Of a stretch of 60,257 bases of DNA, positions 8,991 through 54,089 are shown one piece after another (position 1 is the stretch's first letter; each line of letters starts with the position of its first letter). The notes under the pieces are model-generated. The model saw only the letters and a program-made list of their open reading frames with translations. It searched no databases and was not told the origin of the DNA. The position numbers were made by a program, and so were the translations under genes. This stretch comes from Gracilinanus agilis (Eukaryota): the NCBI RefSeq assembly GCF_016433145.1, contig NC_058130.1, forward strand, positions 780,366,911 through 780,427,167. Direction: 5' to 3'.

Positions 8991-9169
8991 GTTATTATCC
9001 CCATTTTACAGAGGAGGAAAAGGAGTCGCAGAGAGATCTGGGGCCCAGGAACAGGCAGCTGGCAAGTGTCTGAGGCAGGATTCAAACTCGGGTCTTCCCG
9101 ACGCCACGTCCAACGCTCTATCGCCCTGCTACCTAGCAGGCTCCAGTTGGAACAGAAATAGGGAGATTG

Positions 9170-9384
9170 GGGGCAGCTGGGTGGCTCAGTGGATGGAGAG
9201 CCAGGCCTGGAGATGGGAGGTCCTGGGTTCAAATCTGGCTTCAGACACTTCCTAGCTGTGTGACCCTGGATAAGTCACTTATACCCCACCCCACCCCCCA
9301 GCCTAGCCCTGACTGCTCTTCTGCCTTGGTACCAATGCACAGTATTCATTCTAAGATGGAAGGGGAGGGTTTAAGAAAAAAAAA
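9170..9384 (+). mobile_element. Full-length marsupial CORE-type SINE with 16-bp TSD
   Basis: tRNA-like head with A/B boxes (GGTGGCTCAGTGG, GGTTCAAATC) and an A-rich tail. The TSD AGAAATAGGGAGATTG lies at 9154-9169 and 9385-9400. Confidence 0.9.
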
Positions 9385-32700: not shown

Positions 32701-35700
32701 CGGCCCCTCACCTGGGGCAGGTCCAGAGTCTGGTCCCAGGCCTGAGGCAGGGGCCTGCTGGCCAGATCGAGGAGCGTCTCCACGCAGCAGGCCAGGAGGG
32801 GCCGCACGCCAGTCGGTGGCTCCCCGGCCACTATGCTCTGGAGGAAGAGGGGGAAGCCTGCCGCCCGGCGGGTCACCGAGCTGTTCCGGGGGCCGCTCAG
32901 CAACTCCAGGCCCTTAAACAAATCGGGAGATGGCGTAAATGGGGGCCGACGGCCGGGCGGCGAGGGCCGAGCCCCCTCGGCCTCCCCCCGGGGCCCCCCA
33001 ACGCCACCCCCCCGAGGAGCCGCCGCTACCTGGGCGAGCAGCTTCTGGGGCAGCTCCTGCAGCTCCGGCTCGGGCTGGCCCAGCAGCGTCCTGCAGAGCG
33101 TGGTGAGGCCGGAGGCGCAGCCCTCCAGAGCGCCCTGTGGGTGCAAAGAGGGGAGGGACAGGGGAGCGCCGCGGGGTCAGGAGGGGGCGGGGGGCTAAGC
33201 CGGGGGCCCTGCCGCTCGCCGAGACCCTCCCGGCCACCCCCGGCGGCCTCGCCAGGGCCCGGGCAAGCCGGGGAGGAGGAAGGAGCTTCCAGAAGGCTCA
33301 GGACACTCACCCAGTGGCGGCACCTGAGCAGCAGCCCCTGCAGGGTGGCCACGATGGTCTGCAGGCCCTCCGGGGGCAGGAGCGGAGACTCAGAGCCGGC
33401 CGTCGGCGGGGCCAGCAGCAGGACCTTCTCTGCCAGGCCTCCCAGAAGCAGGCCGATCTCCTGGGCAAGAGCGTGAGGGCACGCGTGAGGCTGCGGCCAG
33501 GGGGGTCAGAGCAGCCCCCGAAGGGCTTCCCCAGCCTCCCGGCCAAGGGAGAGCACCCCGACGTGCCTGGCTGGCCCCCCTCCGCTCTCCTGTCTCTGCC
33601 CCCAGGAGGCAGCGCCCAGAGAAGGAGGAGGAGCTGGCCAAGCCTCCACTCTGACATCCCTGACGAGCGGCTGCCTGGCATCTCCCCGAAGACCTCCAAG
33701 AACGGAGGGACCCCTGGAGGCGGCTCCCAGTGCCGGGACAGCTTCCCCCCTTGGGGCCAAACAGAGCACAGACGCCCCCCATGGTGGACTCTCGGGCCCT
33801 TGAGGACGGCTCCTCTGCCCCGCCTTGACCTTCTCCTCTCCAGGCTCCACATTCCCAGTTCCTCGGCGTCCACCGTGGGGGCCCGCCCTCAGGGGTGCCT
33901 CCTCCTTCCTGCGGTGGGAGCCTGTCCCAGACCGGGCCATCCTGTCCACTCCCAGCCCGCGGCCCCGGACCCTAGGCCGGAGCTCACCCTCACCGTGTCT
34001 GCCCATCCCGGGCTGCCTCCTCTCACCTTGGCAGAGATCCAGCAGCAGGTGAGGATGCGTCCCTGCTCCTCGGACAGCAGGAGTGGGGGTTCTCCCTCCT
34101 CCTCCTCGGCCCCAAAGTCCCCAGCTCTGCCCTGCCACACAGCGGCGTTGATGGCCGCCCCCATGTCAGCCAGGGAGGGTGCAGCAGCTACCAAGACACC
34201 ACAGCGAGGGTCGCCACGGGGCTCCCGGACACGAGGGCACCCAGAAAGGGGAGGCCCTGGGAGGGGGGCTTGAAAGGGGCCCCAGCCCACCCGGGGACAC
34301 TGCCCCCTGGCCCCGTTGGCACGGGTACCCACCTGGCTGCAGGTCTTCTCCGGAGCCCTGCAGGACGGCCAGAAGGAAGGAGGCGACCTCAGCCAGCATC
34401 GTCACGGTGTTCATGAGCAGCTCCTGCCAGGACTCCTGGGTAGGGGTCTGCTGCATGGACAGGCTGGTGCAGGGGGCCTCCAGGAGGCATCGGCGCAGGG
34501 CGCACAGAGGTCCTGGGAAAAGGACACCTTCTCGGCGAGGGCCCCGGTTCCTCCTTTGCCCAGCCCTGCCCAGCCCGTCTTTGCGGGAGCCCCAAATTCC
34601 CAAAAGCCTCCCAACACTGGCTGCCTGGAAACCAAGAGGGAGGGGATGGCAGGGGCCAAAGGCAGAGGGAAGGGAAGAGTGAGACCAGGGTGGGCTTAGA
34701 GGGACCAGGAGAGACACGTAGAGAACACTGGAGATGAGAGAGAGAGAATGGGAGGGAAGAGAGAACAAGATGAGGAAACCCTGGGGAGAAAATTCCCTAA
34801 ATTCCCCACAGAAGACCACAGGGAAGAAAAAGAATGAGGGGAAGGACACGAATGGGGGCAGAGGCCACGGAGAGAGGATGGGGCGGCGGGAAGAATGGCC
34901 ACAGAGGGAGACAGAAATCAGGGAAACCCTGGGGAAAAGAGAGAACCGGGGGAGGCAGGAAGTACAAGCACAACAACAGATCGGGAAAGAGAGCCTTGGC
35001 ACAGAGTGAAAAGGGAAAACTGAGGGGACACCAGCAGGAAGAGAAAGAAATGGGGGCACCCAGTGGTAAGAAGAAGCAAGGGCAGCCAACGGTGAAGAGA
35101 GAGGAACAAGGGNAGTGGTAAAGAGAGAATGGGGGGACACGGGAGAGAGCCAGGGGACCCACTAGGGAAGAGACAGCTGGACAGCACATAAGGAAGTGAG
35201 AAGACATGGTGTGTGGAGGGCAGTAAACAGGGTTAGAGGCTCCTCAGTCCCCCCAGAAGCCCCTACCATGGAGTGGCTGAGTGCAGGCAACCTGCAGCAG
35301 ATCTTGCTGGGCCGCAGTGTGACGCTCTTGAAGCAAACGGAGAAGGTAGGAGACGAGAATGAGGCTGGGGCAGTCGGGGGCTGGGCCGTCCTCCTCAGGC
35401 CCGGGGACAATCTTCTGGAGGGTGTCACTGTCCACTCTGCCAAAGATGAGAGCACACGTTGCCTCCCGGCAACCCTCAGGCTCAGGAAGCCTGGCCAAGA
35501 ACCCCGAGTCCCACCACCTCCCCTTCACCCCAAGAGGCAGCCCTGAGAGGCAGAGTGGAGGAGAGGAAGGCCCCAGTGGGTGGGGGAAGGAGAAAAGGGA
35601 AGCCTGAGTCTCTGAGCCCACCCTGCCCCCTTCTCCACCCCAAAGCCTTACTTCTGCAGCAAGGTCTGCATCATGAGGGCCCCAGCTTCCACCTCCTGCC

Positions 35701-48145: not shown

Positions 48146-48756
48146 ATGAGACCAATCTCCCTAATGAACACAGATGCAAAAATCTTAAATAGAATACCAG
48201 CAAAAAGACTCCAGCAAGTGATCATGAGGGTTATTCACTATAATCAGGTGGGATTTATACCAGGAATGCAAGGATGGTTCAACATTAGGAAAACCATCCA
48301 CATAATTGACCATATCAACAGTTTAACAAACAAAAATCACATGATTATCTCGATAGATGCTGAAAAAGCCTTTGACAAAATAGGACACCTATTCCTACTG
48401 AAAACACTAGAAAGTATAGGAATCGAAGGACCTTTCCTAAAAACAATAAACAGTATATATCTAAAACCATCAACAAGCGTCATATGCAATGGGGATAAAT
48501 TAGAAGCCTTTCCCATAAGATCAGGAGTGAAACAAGGATGCCCACTATTGCCTCTATTATTTACAGGATTTGGATGTAGACTCTTAATAGCCACCCTAGA
48601 ATAATTATCAATAATATGGAAATAGGTCTTGATGGATGACACAGGAAGAAACCAGTGGAAATGCGTGTGGGCTACTGGGGGGTGGGGTGGGGGGAGAGAG
48701 AGCAAGAACATGAATCATGGAACCATAGAACATTTTTTTCTAAAAAATAAAGAATA
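48146..48756 (+). mobile_element. Internally deleted L1: ORF2 reverse-transcriptase fragment fused to L1 3' UTR/poly(A)
   Basis: The translation [14 protein letters not shown]...[16 protein letters not shown]...[10 protein letters not shown]...SGVKQGCPL is L1 RT. It switches at ~48563 to a 3'-UTR-like sequence and an A-rich tail. The TSD AAAAAAATAG(C/T)GGCA lies at 48131-48145 and 48757-48771, at a TTTT/AAAA site. Confidence 0.9.
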
Positions 48757-49479: not shown

Positions 49480-49870
49480 GCGGGTACAGCAATGCGGCAG
49501 AAGCGGGGGAGGGGGGGAGGATGAATAAGGGGGCTAGGCGCGATCTCCCGTCCACGTGGTTACTTGGATTGGCCCCGTGGAGCCACCGTCCTTCGGAGGC
49601 GCTGGGCCACGCCTTCACGTTCCCATGACAACCGCCCAGTCTGACTGTCAGTCGTTGGCGCGGGGCGCTGGCGTATCCGTGACGTAATCATTGCGCGCCG
49701 TAGGACGCCGGCCGGAGCGCGCTGGGGGTGGGGGGAGCGGTCTACACGGTGGGGGCCACCCGCCGGACACCTACACAAGAGCCGTAACCCTGAAGAGTGT
49801 GTAAGGGGCGCTTCGCCGGCTTTGCCATCCTCGTCCTAGTCCTATGCGACCCTCGCGACCACCCTGAAAG
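49480..49870 (+). promoter_or_regulatory. CpG-island promoter and probable non-coding exon 1 of the Myb/SANT gene
   Basis: CpG-dense, with E-box CACGTG at 49553-49558, inverted CCAAT at 49568-49572 and CRE-like TGACGTAA at 49680-49687. The strong donor AAG|GTAGGT at 49870/49871 pairs plausibly with the acceptor at 50559. Confidence 0.7.
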
Positions 49871-50569
49871 GTAGGTGCCGGCGGGGGCTACCCTTTCAGA
49901 CAGGGAAACTGAGGCACGGGCTGGGGAGGGAGATGCCCAGGACCTCCCCCTTTTCTCGCTGGAAGGGCTTGAGGTCGTATTCTAATTCTGGACTTCCTGG
50001 CCTGGGGGACCCAGCCCCCCCCCACCTAGGGGAGTACTGCCCATCCCCCTGTGGGGAGCTGTGGTCACCTGCTGCTGACCCTGGCAGGGAAACCAGCCCA
50101 GCCCTCCCGGGAGCTTACCCTGGGGGGAATCAGGGAGTCTAAAGCTTCAATATAGGGGACACCCCCAGGGGTTCTGCAAAGCCTTAGTGTAGGTGACAGC
50201 AGCCTTAAAGAGCTGTGGAGCCTATGGGTGCCTCTGAGAAGGGCCCAAAGAGATGTGGGGAAGGGGCTCAGGTGACCCCTGGGAGATGCTTGGAGCATGG
50301 GGACCAGGTGGGGCAAAAGGCTTGGATGGGGGTGATGGGAAGGCCACATAGAGAGGGAAGCTGGCTGGGAGCCAGGGGTCTGCATTTGGTCCCAGGGGGC
50401 ATCGGGAGCCATAGGTGGTCCAGAGACATAGGGGCTGCCTCTGAAGGGTCCTTCCTGTAATTTGACAGAGGCTGTCAGGTGGGCTTGGCCCTCTGAGCCT
50501 GTGGTCCGCTGGCTGAGCGAGTGCTTAGGGAATGATGCAGGGTGTGCTTGATTTTGCAGGGCCGCCACA

Positions 50570-51583
50570 ATGGCAGCCAGGCCAAAGAGGATTAAGTTCT
50601 CGGAGGAAGAGAAGATCGTGATCTTGGAAGAGTTCAGTCTGCGGAAGGACATCCTCATCCCCAAGAGCGGCCGCTACCGCAACACCATGGACCGCCAGCG
50701 GGCCTGGGAGGAGATCACGATGGCGGTGAACTCGCTGAATCCCCTGGTGCAGCGTACACCAGACGAAGTCCGCAAGAAATGGAAAAACATGATCATTGAC
50801 GCCCGCAAGGAGCTGGCCACCGCCAAGCACCCTGTGCTCCGGAGGCGCCCCCAGGAGCGCCTCTTCCATAACATCTTTGCTCTCTTCAACAAGACAAGTG
50901 CTGAACTCCCCGAGCCTCTGTATGCAGCAGGCCCAGGTTTTCGGACTAAGGGGCCCACCAGCCCACCAGGGCCTGCCTGCAAGGCAGAAGGATTTCTGGA
51001 CCCCGTCCCCAACTTGCTACTCCGGCCCCAGGGGGGTGGGATGGAGCCTGGCCAGGAGAGGGAGGGACTATGTCAGATTGATGCCGACAGAAAACTAGAT
51101 GCGTGGCCTGAGGTCCCAAGGAAGGGCCTCCTCCAAGCCTCTGTGGATGAGCAGGCCCAGTTCAAGGAGGACTCTCTGACTGAAGATGCCTCCGAGTTCG
51201 GAGAAAAGAGGCTGCTGGACCCCCTGAAGGACTTGCCCCTGCACTGTGAGCCTGTGTCTCAGGTGCATCCCGCCTCAGCAGATGGGGCTGTGTCCCCAGA
51301 GGGTCCATCTGGGGACATGCCCCACCTCTGCACCATGCCCGTGCCAACGAGCCTGTCCCCAGACCCGACTCTGACTTATAAGATTAAATGCCCTGTCAGC
51401 CCTTTGCTAGATTGGCCCTGTTTGGGAGTGAGTTCAAGCCCAGTCACACCCAGCGGCCGGATGGACGCTCTGAGTACAGAAGGAATCCAGCCAGCCGTGG
51501 ACAACAACGGTGAGCTCTCGGGGCAGGCCTGGGCGGTCGGTCTACCCCTCCCACCCGGCAGCCTTGGCCTTGTTCAAGTCTAG
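50570..51583 (+). CDS. Myb/SANT-like DNA-binding domain protein (MSANTD/Harbinger Myb-like family), 337 aa, single coding exon
   Basis: The ATG is in a strong Kozak context (gccacaATGG), 10 nt after a ttttgcag acceptor at 50559. The N-terminal ~90 aa, RPKRIKFSEEEKIVILEEFSLRKDILIPKSGRYRNTMDRQRAWEEITMAVNSLNPLVQRTPDEVRKKWKNMIIDARKEL, has the F-S-x-x-E / W / R-T / K-K-W pattern of the Myb_DNA-bind_5-type domain shared by MSANTD, NAIF1, MYPOP and TSNARE1. A Pro/acid-rich low-complexity tail follows. Confidence 0.88.
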   Translation: MAARPKRIKFSEEEKIVILEEFSLRKDILIPKSGRYRNTMDRQRAWEEITMAVNSLNPLVQRTPDEVRKKWKNMIIDARKELATAKHPVLRRRPQERLFHNIFALFNKTSAELPEPLYAAGPGFRTKGPTSPPGPACKAEGFLDPVPNLLLRPQGGGMEPGQEREGLCQIDADRKLDAWPEVPRKGLLQASVDEQAQFKEDSLTEDASEFGEKRLLDPLKDLPLHCEPVSQVHPASADGAVSPEGPSGDMPHLCTMPVPTSLSPDPTLTYKIKCPVSPLLDWPCLGVSSSPVTPSGRMDALSTEGIQPAVDNNGELSGQAWAVGLPLPPGSLGLVQV

Positions 51584-51983
51584 CAAAGTTAGAAACCTGG
51601 CCCAGGCACTGCTTGGGCATAAACGAGACCCTAGAGTCTCAGCCATCCCCAAGGTTAGCCCTTTAGCTTACAGATGAGGAAACTGAGGTCACAGCTAGAA
51701 AGTGTCAGAGCCTGGACTTAACCCAGGGGTTCTAGTCAATGTTTCTTTCCATCTCAACTTCTCAGCAAACCATTTTGACAGAAGAGAACAGAGTTAAACA
51801 GAAAACAATCATGACACAAATTGGTTAATAAATTTGTGAGTTGGCCACTACCAGGAGGTGAATATTTTTTTTTTTTCAGCAGTTGGAATATGGGCTGTCA
51901 GAGTGTGGACAGATTAGGATTTGTGTTGATGGAAACAGTGTAGACTAATGACATTTTTGAAGTTTTAAACAAATTTTATTTCA

Positions 51984-51989
51984 AATAAA
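51984..51989 (+). terminator. Polyadenylation signal of the Myb/SANT gene (alternative AATAAA at 51827-51832)
   Basis: AATAAA about 400 nt after the stop codon, followed by U- and GU-rich sequence (tttttttttgttc...tttttttgtcacttttgttgttg). Confidence 0.6.
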
Positions 51990-54089
51990 AAGATTTTTTT
52001 TTGTTCATATCATGCCCTTTTTTGTCACTTTTGTTGTTGCTTGATAAAGATAGAGAACCAGTTTTCATGTAGTCCAAACCTAGGTTTGGTAGAAGTCTCA
52101 TTTGGGGGGAGTGTGGCATCAGGCCCGATTCTTAAGTAGTATGAGCTCCCCCACGGTGGTTTGGCCGGCCTGCCTATCTGGGGTCCTGGCATTCTCTGGG
52201 GTAGAATTTGCCCTGAAGCTTTGTAGCTCCATGATACAGCCAAAGCAAGTTAGGGATCCTCCCTGACCCTCAGTTTCCTCGTTAAGAAGAATATGAGGGA
52301 CAGCTAGGTGGTTCAATGGATTGAGAGCCAGGCCCAGAGACGGCAGGTCCTGGGTTCCAATCTGGCCTCAGACACTTCCTAGCTGTATGACCCTGGGCAA
52401 GTCACTTAGCCCCCATTGCCTAGCCTTTACTCTTCTTCTGCCTTGAAACAATAGTATCAATTCTAAGGCAGATGGTAAAGATTGTTTTTAAAAAAGAAGA
52501 AAAGTGTGATACAACTCTGTGCTACAGCGGGTGAATTTGGGCCTAGTCGAATGACCAGACCCAAAGAATGTTGGTGTCTGTGAAGAGGTCTTTGCATGAG
52601 GGGGTGTCCCGGGGATCCGACCTTCACAGAATGTAACTCAGATTGAGGCAGGCCAGGCTCTTGCCCCATCTTTCTCCATCCAAGCCAGGAGTGGCGGCTA
52701 ACATTTCGGGTGGTGGAGATCAAAAAGAGCAGAGGGCCAAGGGATGGGGGAAAAGAGAAGGGCAGGCACCGGGCGCAGTGCTAAGTGCTTTACTCATATC
52801 ATCTCGAGCCTTGTTCTGCTTGGTCCCAGGCAGCGGCAGCTTTGGTTCAGGGGGAGGAAAAGCTCCCTGACCATCAGAGCTGTTCCAAAGTGGAAGGGGC
52901 CGCCTTGGGCCTTCACTGGAGGTCTTGGGTTGGGTTGCAGGACCCTGTGAAGGTTTCAAGGAGGATTCCTGTGGAAACAGAATGGAAACATTCCTCTCAC
53001 AGCTGGGTGTATTCTCTCCTACCCCCCAACCTTGGGAGACTCCAAATGCCCAGCAAATACAAGTGGCTGTTGGGAGAGAAGGTGTGTGCTTTGGCCAGGT
53101 CAGAGGTTCCATTGCAGAATCAGAGACTGGAGACCCAGATGGGAGCTCTGTGATCACTTACTGCCCCCCCCCCATTGCCCCCCAAGTATGCACAAACTCC
53201 TGCCTTTCCACACCCCTGATCATGCTGCTCCAGCCTGGGCTGGTGCCCTCCACCTCCCGGCCTGGCTCATACTGGCTCAGCTGGGATCATCCATGGCATT
53301 TCCTGATGTCCAGCCTCACTGGCCTCTCTACTGCCCTCCTCAGTGCTCCTGGTCCTTCCCTTGATGGCCAAACAGGACCAGGCTGATCCTTCCTCCACCT
53401 GACAGCCCTTAGGTTCTTGGACCCAGCTCTTGGGCCCGGCCTGAGTCTCCTCTACACCAAATATAATCACTTCCTTCAGTTGATCCTTCCGTGGCTTGGA
53501 TGCCAGGCCTAGCACCATCCTGGTTGCCTTCTCTGGGCTCTTCAGCTTCTCAGTGCCCTTCTTAATGTCATTGGGGTGCCCAGAGCTGAACACGGTACTT
53601 GGATGAAGGCTCAGCATCCCAGAAGGGAGAGACACCTCCCTGTTCCTGGAAGCTTGTCTCCTTACCCTCCTGAGTCCAAAAGAGTTTGCAGTCCACTGCA
53701 ACCCCCAGATCAAATGATGAATCAATCAGTAAACATTTATTAAGCGCCTACTATGTGCCAGATACTGAGCTAAGCTCTGGGGATATAAAAGAGACAAAAG
53801 GGGGCAGCTAGGTGGCTCAGTGGATGGAAGTCTAGGTCTGGAGACAGGAAGTTCTGGGTTTAAATACAACCTCAGAAACTTCCTAGCCATGTGACCCTGG
53901 GCAAGTCACTTAACCCCCATTGCCTAGCCCTTACCACTCTTCTCCCTTGGAACCGCACACAGCGTTGATTCTAAGATGGTTCTGAAACATAGCTGGAAAG
54001 TGTCTCAGGTCAGATTTGAACCCAGAACCTCCCACATCTAGGCCTGGATCTCTATCCACTGAGCCGAGCTACTGAATTGCCCTCAAGGG

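What the first reader, a model, noticed from the sequence alone, without database searches (positions are those of the whole stretch)
49480..51990. Probable domesticated Harbinger Myb/SANT gene that matches no familiar eutherian family member
Seen: a CpG-island promoter, a non-coding exon 1, a strong Kozak, an intact 337-aa ORF with a Myb/SANT-like domain and a poly(A) signal. No TIRs and no DDE transposase ORF lie nearby. Established: Harbinger/PIF transposons encode a separate Myb/SANT DNA-binding protein, and vertebrate MSANTD1-4, NAIF1, MYPOP and TSNARE1 are thought to derive from repeated domestications of it; NAIF1 partners HARBI1. Inferred: the domain differs from the recalled sequence of each of these, so it may be an independent domestication lost in eutherians.
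Basis: partly seen in the sequence, partly recalled or inferred. Interest (0 to 1): 0.75.

Follow-up and report, generated by a model that had tools for sequence, protein, structure and literature searches.

The report
Unnamed Harbinger-derived Myb gene, absent from placentals
This opossum gene is real and long conserved: it encodes a DNA-binding protein descended from a Harbinger "jumping gene" helper protein, is shared by marsupials, birds, turtles and lizards, has no detectable counterpart among placental mammal proteins, and appears not to have been described.

Summary
The 337-aa ORF (50570-51583, +) exists and has a Myb_DNA-bind_5 domain (E 1.2e-16). But it reads through a conserved phase-1 splice donor at 51509|51510. 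Orthologues (Monodelphis, 389 aa, 95% identical) continue into a last exon that encodes a nearly invariant coiled coil. That exon is not in the window, and the poly(A) signals lie in the intron.

- Orthologues occur only in marsupials, turtles, birds and squamates. No eutherian, monotreme, crocodilian, amphibian or fish orthologue appeared in two word searches or in an exhaustive profile search of 1.84 billion representatives.
- The gene is single copy. It sits beside the same THADA-like gene in six species, and a 310-315-aa mitochondrial-carrier gene lies downstream in four of them.
- dN/dS is 0.16-0.30 overall and at most 0.16 in the Myb domain.
- No TIRs or transposase remnant are present.
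- Its nearest relative (bootstrap 97) is a sturgeon Myb gene next to a Harbinger transposase fragment. A cyprinid Harbinger element with TIRs, 3-bp TSDs and a DDE_Tnp_4 gene encodes the same Myb-plus-coiled-coil protein.
- The domain model best matches the Drosophila Zeste DNA-binding domain.

Gaps: no tool returned MSANTD3, MSANTD4, NAIF1 or MYPOP sequences, so independent domestication versus an old paralogue is unresolved. Eutherian loss rests on protein catalogues only. The scan has noted a different Myb/SANT gene, also unmatched in placentals, elsewhere in this genome.

The parts
49540..49900 (.). CpG-rich patch, the putative promoter
   Evidence: The 200-bp window 49600-49799 has GC 0.68, CpG observed/expected 1.04 and 24 CpGs. 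The flanks fall to observed/expected 0-0.6. Promoter use is inferred.
49700..49870 (+). Putative non-coding exon 1 (5' limit unknown) ending at donor AAAG|GTAGGT
   Evidence: Shown by sequence signals only. No transcript data or cross-species DNA were available.
50560..51509 (+). First coding exon: acceptor TTTTGCAG|GG, ATG at 50570, 313 codons plus 1 base (phase 1)
   Evidence: tblastn of the Monodelphis orthologue P0001 aa 1-313 maps to 50570-51508 at 95% identity. The donor is AACG|GTGAGC. The same intron position and phase occur in turtle, duck and amphisbaenian.
50585..50890 (+). Myb/SANT-like (Myb_DNA-bind_5, Zeste-type trihelix) DNA-binding domain, aa 6-107
   Evidence: Pfam E 1.2e-16. 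It is 100% identical to Monodelphis and about 85% to turtle. The AF2 domain model has pLDDT 81.5. The best PDB matches are the Zeste DNA-binding domain 5cqq: Foldseek prob 1.0 and TM 0.75, VIA Z 8.2.
50891..51509 (+). Predicted disordered middle region (aa 108-313)
   Evidence: In the full-length model of the Monodelphis orthologue, pLDDT is below 50 for residues 110-335. dN/dS is 0.2-0.46.
51338..51457 (+). Conserved island inside the disordered region (aa 257-296; core KIKCP.SP..DWPCLG)
   Evidence: Columns P257, S263, D265, P275, S277, P278, W282, P283, L285, S290, P291 and S295 are invariant or nearly so across marsupials and sauropsids. Its function is unknown; it may be an interaction or phosphorylation motif (inference).
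51510..51583 (+). Intron read-through tail of the 337-aa ORF, including its stop codon
   Evidence: The orthologues do not align here. It begins with GTGAGC.
51827..51989 (+). Two AATAAA hexamers (51827, 51984) inside the intron
   Evidence: They could end a short isoform that lacks the coiled coil, but nothing supports their use.

Best explanation
The locus is the 5' two-thirds of a spliced, single-copy host gene. The gene is unnamed in databases (for example LOC103091946 in Monodelphis).

Origin: it descends from the Myb-like accessory gene of a PIF/Harbinger transposon. It was immobilised no later than the amniote ancestor. Marsupials, turtles, birds and squamates keep it, and no orthologue is detectable among eutherian proteins.

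Product: the protein is about 389 aa. It has an N-terminal Zeste-type Myb/SANT trihelix domain, a long disordered linker with one conserved short motif, and a C-terminal 45-residue leucine-rich helix encoded by a last exon outside the window.

Likely mechanism (inferred): the protein binds specific DNA sites through the trihelix and self-associates through the coiled coil. It would then act as a dimeric or oligomeric transcription or chromatin factor, as Zeste does and as Harbinger Myb-like proteins do when they bind transposon ends and recruit a partner. Whether it still partners a HARBI1-type protein is unknown.
For: Real gene:
- Orthologues score E 1e-197 to 1e-40 in five marsupial orders, turtles, birds and squamates.
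- The two-coding-exon structure has an identical phase-1 intron site in opossum, turtle, duck and amphisbaenian.
- NG86 dN/dS is 0.16-0.30 over the whole CDS, 0-0.16 in the Myb domain and 0.12-0.21 in the last exon for the deep pairs. The unsaturated duck pair gives 0.22 at dS 0.12.

Fixed locus:
- A THADA-like gene (TPR_Trm732/DUF2428, about 1,880-1,910 aa where the model is complete) lies directly upstream in Monodelphis, Petaurus, Emydura, Aythya, Oxyura and Rhineura.
- A 310-315-aa Mito_carr gene lies downstream in both ducks and both marsupials.
- In the window, tblastx places the 3' exons of the THADA-like gene at about 23.8-25.6 kb on the minus strand.

Not mobile: there is one copy in the window, no TIRs, and no transposase similarity in the window or in four sauropsid loci.

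Harbinger ancestry:
- In the careful tree the amniote clade has support 100/99. Its sister, at 97/90, is sterlet P0048.
- P0048 lies convergent to a Harbinger transposase N-terminal fragment.
- Siphateles P0054/P0185 is encoded in a 3.2-kb element present at three loci at 98-99% identity. The element has 27-bp TIRs, 3-bp CWG duplications and a convergent DDE_Tnp_4 ORF at E 5e-25.
- Its protein matches both the Myb domain and the coiled coil, including the shared word LQLQKEK.

Fold:
- The AF2 models show helices at 12-24, 26-29, 39-56, 64-86, 88-91 and 94-110, and a helix at 341-387 with pLDDT 97-98.
- The top structural match is the Zeste DNA-binding domain bound to DNA.

Eutherian absence:
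- An orthologue above 50% identity would share 5-mers and so appear.
- One below 50% identity would be its own representative.
- Neither was seen. After the amniote group, scores drop from at least 168 bits to 100 bits or less (the low-quality kiwi model P0042 scores 111 bits).
Against: - The last exon was not found in the window, so intactness of the whole gene in this species is not shown.
- No transcript evidence exists for exon 1, for splicing or for expression.
- MSANTD3, MSANTD4, NAIF1 and MYPOP were never retrieved, so there is no direct tree with them. Only 30 of the 150 listed distant representatives could be named.
- The tree uses about 100 columns.
- dS is saturated in the deep pairs, and no second marsupial DNA sequence was available.
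- Absence from eutherians, monotremes, crocodilians and amphibians is absence from predicted protein sets, not from genomes.
- DNA binding, oligomerisation and any partner are inferred from fold and ancestry.
Confidence: 0.78

Rival explanations
1. The gene is an ancient paralogue, by gene or block duplication in early vertebrates, of an already known Harbinger-derived gene such as MSANTD4, MSANTD3 or NAIF1. On this reading it is not a separate domestication event. It was later lost in several lineages, including eutherians.
For: - The Myb_DNA-bind_5 plus C-terminal EKEKL-type coiled-coil architecture is shared with many relatives.
- NCBI pipelines label one orthologue fragment, and several distant invertebrate and fish relatives, as 'MSANTD4' or 'MYPOP-like'.
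- Etchegaray et al. 2022 (PMC9392472) could not separate MSANTD3, MSANTD4 and NAIF1 origins by maximum likelihood.
Against: - The nearest relative is a transposon-associated sturgeon sequence (97/90).
- None of the 30 named representatives among the top hits is a vertebrate MSANTD3, MSANTD4, NAIF1 or MYPOP.
- No orthologue was seen in fish or amphibians, which an early-vertebrate duplication would predict unless there were several losses.
Confidence: 0.2
2. Eutherians, and also monotremes and crocodilians, still carry the gene. It is unannotated, or too diverged for protein catalogues to show it.
For: - Chicken-like and duck-like copies appear only as unnamed SRA-assembly proteins, and several bird models are partial or mis-spliced. 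Annotation of this GC-rich locus is therefore patchy.
- No genome-level search of eutherians was possible with these tools.
Against: - Many eutherian genomes carry predicted protein sets, yet none gave a hit, while every marsupial order sampled did.
- The Myb domain and coiled coil are about 85-100% conserved between marsupials and turtles, so a retained eutherian copy should be easy to recognise.
Confidence: 0.1
3. It is a transposon copy or decaying pseudogene rather than a functional gene. Alternatively, in this species the product is the 337-aa read-through form ended by the intronic poly(A) signals.
For: The last exon is absent from the window. AATAAA hexamers follow the ORF.
Against: - The coding exon is intact and 95% identical to Monodelphis.
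- The splice donor is conserved and dN/dS is well below 1.
- The locus is single copy and syntenic, with no TIRs or transposase.
- Marsupial CDS spans of 9.3-11.5 kb place the last exon at or beyond the window end.
Confidence: 0.04

Closest known systems
[quoted passage not shown] 2022, PMC9392472; Sinzelle et al. 2008 for NAIF1-HARBI1, from my own knowledge)
   Same: It has a Myb_DNA-bind_5 trihelix at the N terminus, transposon ancestry, a fixed syntenic locus and purifying selection. From memory only, MSANTD4 also has C-terminal coiled coils.
   Different: There is no eutherian or human orthologue, and the phyletic range is different (amniotes minus placentals, against jawed vertebrates or sarcopterygians). 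Its neighbours are a THADA-like gene and a short mitochondrial-carrier gene. It was not picked up by that human-centred screen.
Myb-like ORF of autonomous PIF/Harbinger transposons (for example the Siphateles boraxobius element in L005-L007)
   Same: The domain order is the same: Myb, then linker, then coiled coil. The coiled-coil words are shared, and these are the nearest sequence relatives.
   Different: The amniote gene has no TIRs, no target-site duplication, no adjacent DDE_Tnp_4 gene and only one copy. It lacks the TGGGP motif that follows the Myb domain in the transposon proteins I read, and it is conserved across about 320 My.
Drosophila Zeste
   Same: It is the best structural match to the DNA-binding domain (5cqq; Z 8.2, rmsd 2.9 A over 71 residues, 25% identity). 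The overall plan is the same: an N-terminal DNA-binding domain and a C-terminal self-association helix (the Zeste plan is from my own knowledge).
   Different: There is no detectable sequence orthology. The match does not stand far above other Myb/SANT and trihelix folds (GT-1 scores Z 7.9).

Membership tests
Host genes domesticated from Harbinger Myb-like proteins | Myb/SANT-like (Myb_DNA-bind_5 type) trihelix domain | tested here: met
   Pfam E 1.2e-16. The AF2 model and the Zeste and GT-1 fold matches agree.
Host genes domesticated from Harbinger Myb-like proteins | Closest relatives are Myb-like proteins encoded inside bona fide Harbinger elements | tested here: met
   The sister is sterlet P0048, which lies next to a transposase fragment. 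The Siphateles element has TIRs, 3-bp duplications and a DDE_Tnp_4 ORF.
Host genes domesticated from Harbinger Myb-like proteins | Single copy at an orthologous, syntenic position in distant species | tested here: met
   A THADA-like gene lies upstream in six species, and a Mito_carr gene lies downstream in four.
Host genes domesticated from Harbinger Myb-like proteins | Purifying selection | tested here: met
   dN/dS is 0.16-0.30 overall and at most 0.16 in the Myb domain. A marsupial-only estimate was not possible.
Host genes domesticated from Harbinger Myb-like proteins | Transcribed, with a host function | not testable with these tools
   No expression data were available.
Orthologue of a named eutherian gene (MSANTD1-4, NAIF1, MYPOP, TSNARE1) | 1:1 orthologue present in eutherians | tested here: not met
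   No eutherian protein appeared. After the amniote group, scores fall to 100 bits or less.
Orthologue of a named eutherian gene (MSANTD1-4, NAIF1, MYPOP, TSNARE1) | Groups with that gene in a joint tree | not tested
   No tool returned these sequences. One search was swamped by coiled-coil words.
Active PIF/Harbinger transposon | TIRs with a 3-bp target-site duplication | tested here: not met
   The only inverted pairs are short, 72-90% matches, several of them MIR-like motifs.
Active PIF/Harbinger transposon | Adjacent DDE_Tnp_4 transposase gene and multiple copies | tested here: not met
   There is no transposase similarity in the window or in L001-L004, and only one copy in the window.
Zeste-like sequence-specific DNA binders | Binds a specific DNA motif and self-associates through the C terminus | not testable with these tools
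   The fold and a high-confidence C-terminal helix are predicted only.

The most novel reading that the evidence does not exclude
This is a separate domestication of a Harbinger Myb-like gene, not yet described. It would have occurred in the amniote stem from a transposon lineage still traceable in sturgeon. It was then lost in placentals together with its neighbours (the THADA-like paralogue and the SBSPON-like gene) as one block. If so, marsupials and sauropsids keep a DNA-binding regulator, and perhaps a small gene neighbourhood, that placental mammals dispensed with.
Probability: 0.4. Interest if true: 0.6.

Novelty: new member of a known kind. Interest (0 to 1): 0.45.

Why it matters
Harbinger Myb-like domestications in vertebrates were catalogued from human proteins (PMC9392472), so genes missing from humans were invisible by design. 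This locus adds a strongly conserved member whose range is amniotes minus placentals.

It gives a dated case of gain in the amniote stem or earlier, followed by loss. It is also a candidate transcription factor for marsupial, bird and reptile biology that has no placental counterpart.

It points as well to a small neighbourhood (a THADA-like paralogue, an SBSPON-like gene and a short mitochondrial-carrier gene) that deserves a check for joint loss in placentals.

Tried and rejected
- **Last exon:** tblastn of the Monodelphis C-terminus against the whole window at E up to 100 with word size 2 found no last exon.
- **Wrong tool:** a bacterial promoter/terminator scan was irrelevant to this locus and is ignored.
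- **PDB by sequence:** a profile search gave nothing at E up to 1.
- **Third word search:** a mixed alignment was swamped by low-complexity coiled-coil words. Only 8,000 candidates were scored, and it returned no vertebrate MSANTD3, MSANTD4 or NAIF1. A joint tree with named paralogues was therefore dropped.
- **Names:** get_proteins carries no names. Short motifs recalled from memory for MSANTD4 and NAIF1 N-termini matched only a mayfly protein and one unnamed hit, which is a lead at best.
- **Marsupial DNA:** Monodelphis and Petaurus DNA could not be fetched because the files are too large, so there is no marsupial-only dN/dS.
- **Transposon gene structure:** a brute-force search for the exon structure of the Siphateles transposon Myb gene failed because it has more than two introns, so intron homology with the transposon gene is untested.
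- **Literature:** three searches found no description of this gene.
- **Scan notes:** a look-up by sequence was blank.
- **No spliced model:** the window's gene was searched only as its single coding exon by reference.
- **Joined sauropsid CDS:** these were assembled only inside a script, from fetched loci. For Emydura, Aythya and Rhineura they translated exactly to the database proteins. For Oxyura the donor homologous to Aythya was used instead of the model's own.
- **Human DNA:** no contig that I take for human was fetched or compared.


Full report
**What is there**

The window holds an ATG ORF of 337 codons at 50570..51583 on the + strand. Residues 9-83 match Pfam Myb_DNA-bind_5 at 60.8 bits and E 1.2e-16. 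Weaker matches to Myb_DNA-bind_4 and MADF overlap it.

The start codon has a strong Kozak context and lies 10 nt after a good acceptor (TTTTGCAG|GG at 50559|50560). About 700 nt upstream, a donor (AAAG|GTAGGT, 49870|49871) follows a short CpG-rich patch. The 49600-49799 window has GC 0.68 and CpG observed/expected 1.04. AATAAA occurs at 51827 and 51984. These parts of the observation are correct, but promoter and exon 1 use are inferred from signals alone.

**The ORF is not the conserved product**

A word search found orthologues at E 1e-197 to 1e-40. The best is Monodelphis LOC103091946 (P0001, 389 aa, 95% identical).

In the alignment every orthologue leaves the window ORF after residue 313. 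Each continues with about 70-76 residues that end in a nearly invariant heptad-rich helix with the core LELQKETLQLQKEK. The break falls on a donor, AACG|GTGAGC at 51509|51510, in phase 1.

In turtle (L001), duck (L002) and amphisbaenian (L003) the annotated proteins are reproduced exactly by joining two coding exons at the same site and phase: ATAATG|GTGAGA, AGAACG|GTGAGG and ATAACG|GTGAGG. Their introns are 0.6-2.4 kb.

The last 24 codons of the ORF and both poly(A) hexamers are therefore intronic. A MIR-like fragment lies there too.

The last exon is not in 51.6-60.26 kb. The CDS spans 9.3 kb in Monodelphis and 11.5 kb in Petaurus. That places the exon at or just beyond the window end. I did not build a joined spliced model of the window's gene. 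It was searched only as its single coding exon, by reference.

**Who has it**

Two word searches returned only marsupials, turtles, birds and squamates (whole ORF, Myb region of P0001). The marsupials cover didelphid, diprotodont, dasyurid, microbiothere and bilby lineages.

An exhaustive profile search of 1.84 billion 50%-identity representatives gave 15 hits below 1e-30, all from this group. Scores then dropped steeply to 100 bits or less.

Short fragments in that list are duck-like, squamate-like or penguin. The low-quality kiwi model P0042 (111 bits) is also from this group.

The two kinds of search close each other's gaps. A eutherian orthologue above 50% identity would share 5-mers and so appear. 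One below 50% identity would be its own representative. None was seen, and none from monotremes, crocodilians, amphibians or fish. This is absence from predicted proteins.

**A fixed, selected gene rather than a transposon**

- A THADA-like gene (TPR_Trm732, DUF2428, TPR_Trm732_C; about 1,880-1,910 aa where the model is complete) lies directly upstream in six species. These are Monodelphis and Petaurus (head-to-head) and Emydura, Aythya, Oxyura and Rhineura (tail-to-head).
- A 310-315-aa Mito_carr gene lies downstream in both ducks and both marsupials. Ducks have an SBSPON-like gene in between.
- In the window, tblastx places the 3' exons of the THADA-like gene at about 23.8-25.6 kb on the minus strand. 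An earlier scan note (s1-154066) marks its Trm732 motif at 32850-32870.
- The window has one copy of the Myb gene and no convincing inverted repeats.
- The window has no similarity to a Harbinger transposase, and neither do four sauropsid loci.

Pairwise Nei-Gojobori dN/dS:

| Region | dN/dS |
|---|---|
| Whole CDS | 0.16-0.30 |
| Myb domain | 0-0.16 |
| Disordered middle | 0.2-0.46 |
| Last exon (deep pairs) | 0.12-0.21 |

The unsaturated duck pair gives 0.22 at dS 0.12. Deep pairs have saturated dS. No second marsupial DNA could be fetched.

**Harbinger ancestry**

The nearest non-amniote hits are fish and invertebrate proteins. Many have the same plan of an N-terminal Myb domain and a C-terminal EKEKL-type coiled coil.

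One of them is Siphateles boraxobius P0054/P0185. It is encoded in a 3.2-kb unit present at three loci at 98-99% identity. The unit is bounded by 27-bp TIRs and 3-bp CWG duplications, and it carries a convergent ORF that matches DDE_Tnp_4 at E 5e-25. That is a genuine, recently active Harbinger element. Its Myb protein shares the coiled-coil word LQLQKEK with the amniote gene.

In a 150-row quick tree the amniote sequences form one clade (SH-aLRT 99). In a 62-row careful tree of the Myb domain the clade has ultrafast bootstrap 100 and SH-aLRT 99, a stem of 0.77 and a species-tree-like interior. Its sister, at 97/90, is sterlet P0048.

P0048 lies 640 bp from, and convergent to, an N-terminal fragment of a Harbinger transposase. 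The fragment is 40% identical to the Siphateles one, and scattered DDE pieces lie nearby. The tree has only about 100 columns and no root.

**What it probably does**

AlphaFold2 on the Monodelphis orthologue gives four features:
- a helical N-terminal domain, which reaches pLDDT 81.5 when modelled alone with 53 sequences;
- a disordered stretch at residues 110-335;
- within that stretch, one conserved island (aa 257-296, core KIKCP.SP..DWPCLG);
- a single helix at 341-387 with pLDDT 97-98.

The domain model's best PDB match, by both Foldseek and VIA-align, is the Drosophila Zeste DNA-binding domain bound to DNA. Foldseek gives prob 1.0 and TM 0.75. VIA-align gives Z 8.2, rmsd 2.9 A, 71 residues and 25% identity. 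Plant GT-1 trihelix and other Myb/SANT folds follow closely.

I infer a sequence-specific DNA binder that self-associates through its C-terminal helix. It would act as a transcription or chromatin factor. A retained partnership with a HARBI1-type protein, as NAIF1 has, is possible but untested.

**Comparison with what is known**

Etchegaray et al. 2022 (PMC9392472) list MSANTD1-4 and NAIF1, with MYPOP, ZSCAN20, PRDM11 and TSNARE1 as further candidates. All came from a human-protein screen, which could not find this gene.

Three literature searches found no description of it. Databases call it 'uncharacterized LOC...', or give it pipeline names such as MYPOP-like, MSANTD4, 'vegetative cell wall protein gp1-like' or 'IF-2-like'.

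I could not retrieve MSANTD3, MSANTD4, NAIF1 or MYPOP sequences with any tool. Whether this is a separate domestication or an old paralogue therefore remains open. The evidence leans towards separate: a transposon-associated sister, and no named vertebrate paralogue among the 30 representatives I could name.

**Verdict**

This is a real gene that is unnamed in databases and undescribed in the literature I could search. It is a new member of the known class of Harbinger Myb-like domestications, with an unusual range of amniotes minus placentals.

Its gene model is wrong at the 3' end, and the claims of independent origin and eutherian loss are not yet proven.

The scan has separately noted a different Myb/SANT gene, also unmatched in placentals, elsewhere in this genome (s1-180424). 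I did not test any link.

Noticed in passing
window about 23800-45000, minus strand: A compact, GC-rich THADA-like gene (TPR_Trm732/DUF2428; 1,883 aa in Monodelphis) lies head-to-head with the Myb gene. In turtle, ducks and amphisbaenian it is tail-to-head, so one of the two genes was inverted in the marsupial or the sauropsid line. It looks like a second THADA-family gene. Whether placentals lack it was not tested.
   Followed up: partly
L005:5725-8921, L006:5726-8956, L007:5725-8906 (Siphateles boraxobius): A 3.2-kb Harbinger element is present at three loci at 98-99% identity. It has 27-bp TIRs (GTGCCCGGTTGCATAAAGCACCTTAAG), 3-bp CWG target duplications, and convergent Myb-like and DDE_Tnp_4 genes. 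It is probably recently active.
   Followed up: yes
L008:6001-9371 (Acipenser ruthenus): The Myb gene P0048, the closest relative of the amniote gene, sits next to a degraded Harbinger transposase. An N-terminal piece lies at 7332-7072 on the minus strand, and DDE pieces lie at 9113-9371 on the plus strand.
   Followed up: partly
L002:12522-21650 and L004:12551-21761 (ducks): Downstream of the Myb gene lie an SBSPON-like gene (TSP1_spondin, SBSPON_C; 250 aa) and a 310-aa mitochondrial-carrier gene. Marsupials show the carrier only within 10 kb. The carrier subfamily was not identified.
   Followed up: no
L004:10820-10826 (Oxyura) and marsupial models P0004, P0006, P0007, P0035: The annotation is uneven. 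The Oxyura model uses a donor 5 nt downstream of the conserved one and so loses the coiled-coil frame. Several marsupial models carry 85-200-aa N-terminal extensions. Galliform and duck copies appear only as unnamed SRA-assembly proteins.
   Followed up: partly
window 48146-48604 (+) and 51660-51700: An L1 reverse-transcriptase fragment lies between the two genes. A MIR-like core (ACAGATGAGGAAACTGAGG) lies in the intron just after the ORF's stop.
   Followed up: no
just upstream of the window (scan notes s1-429583, s1-154031): Earlier readers noted a filovirus VP24-like fossil and nested transposons within 2 kb before the window start. I did not examine them.
   Followed up: no
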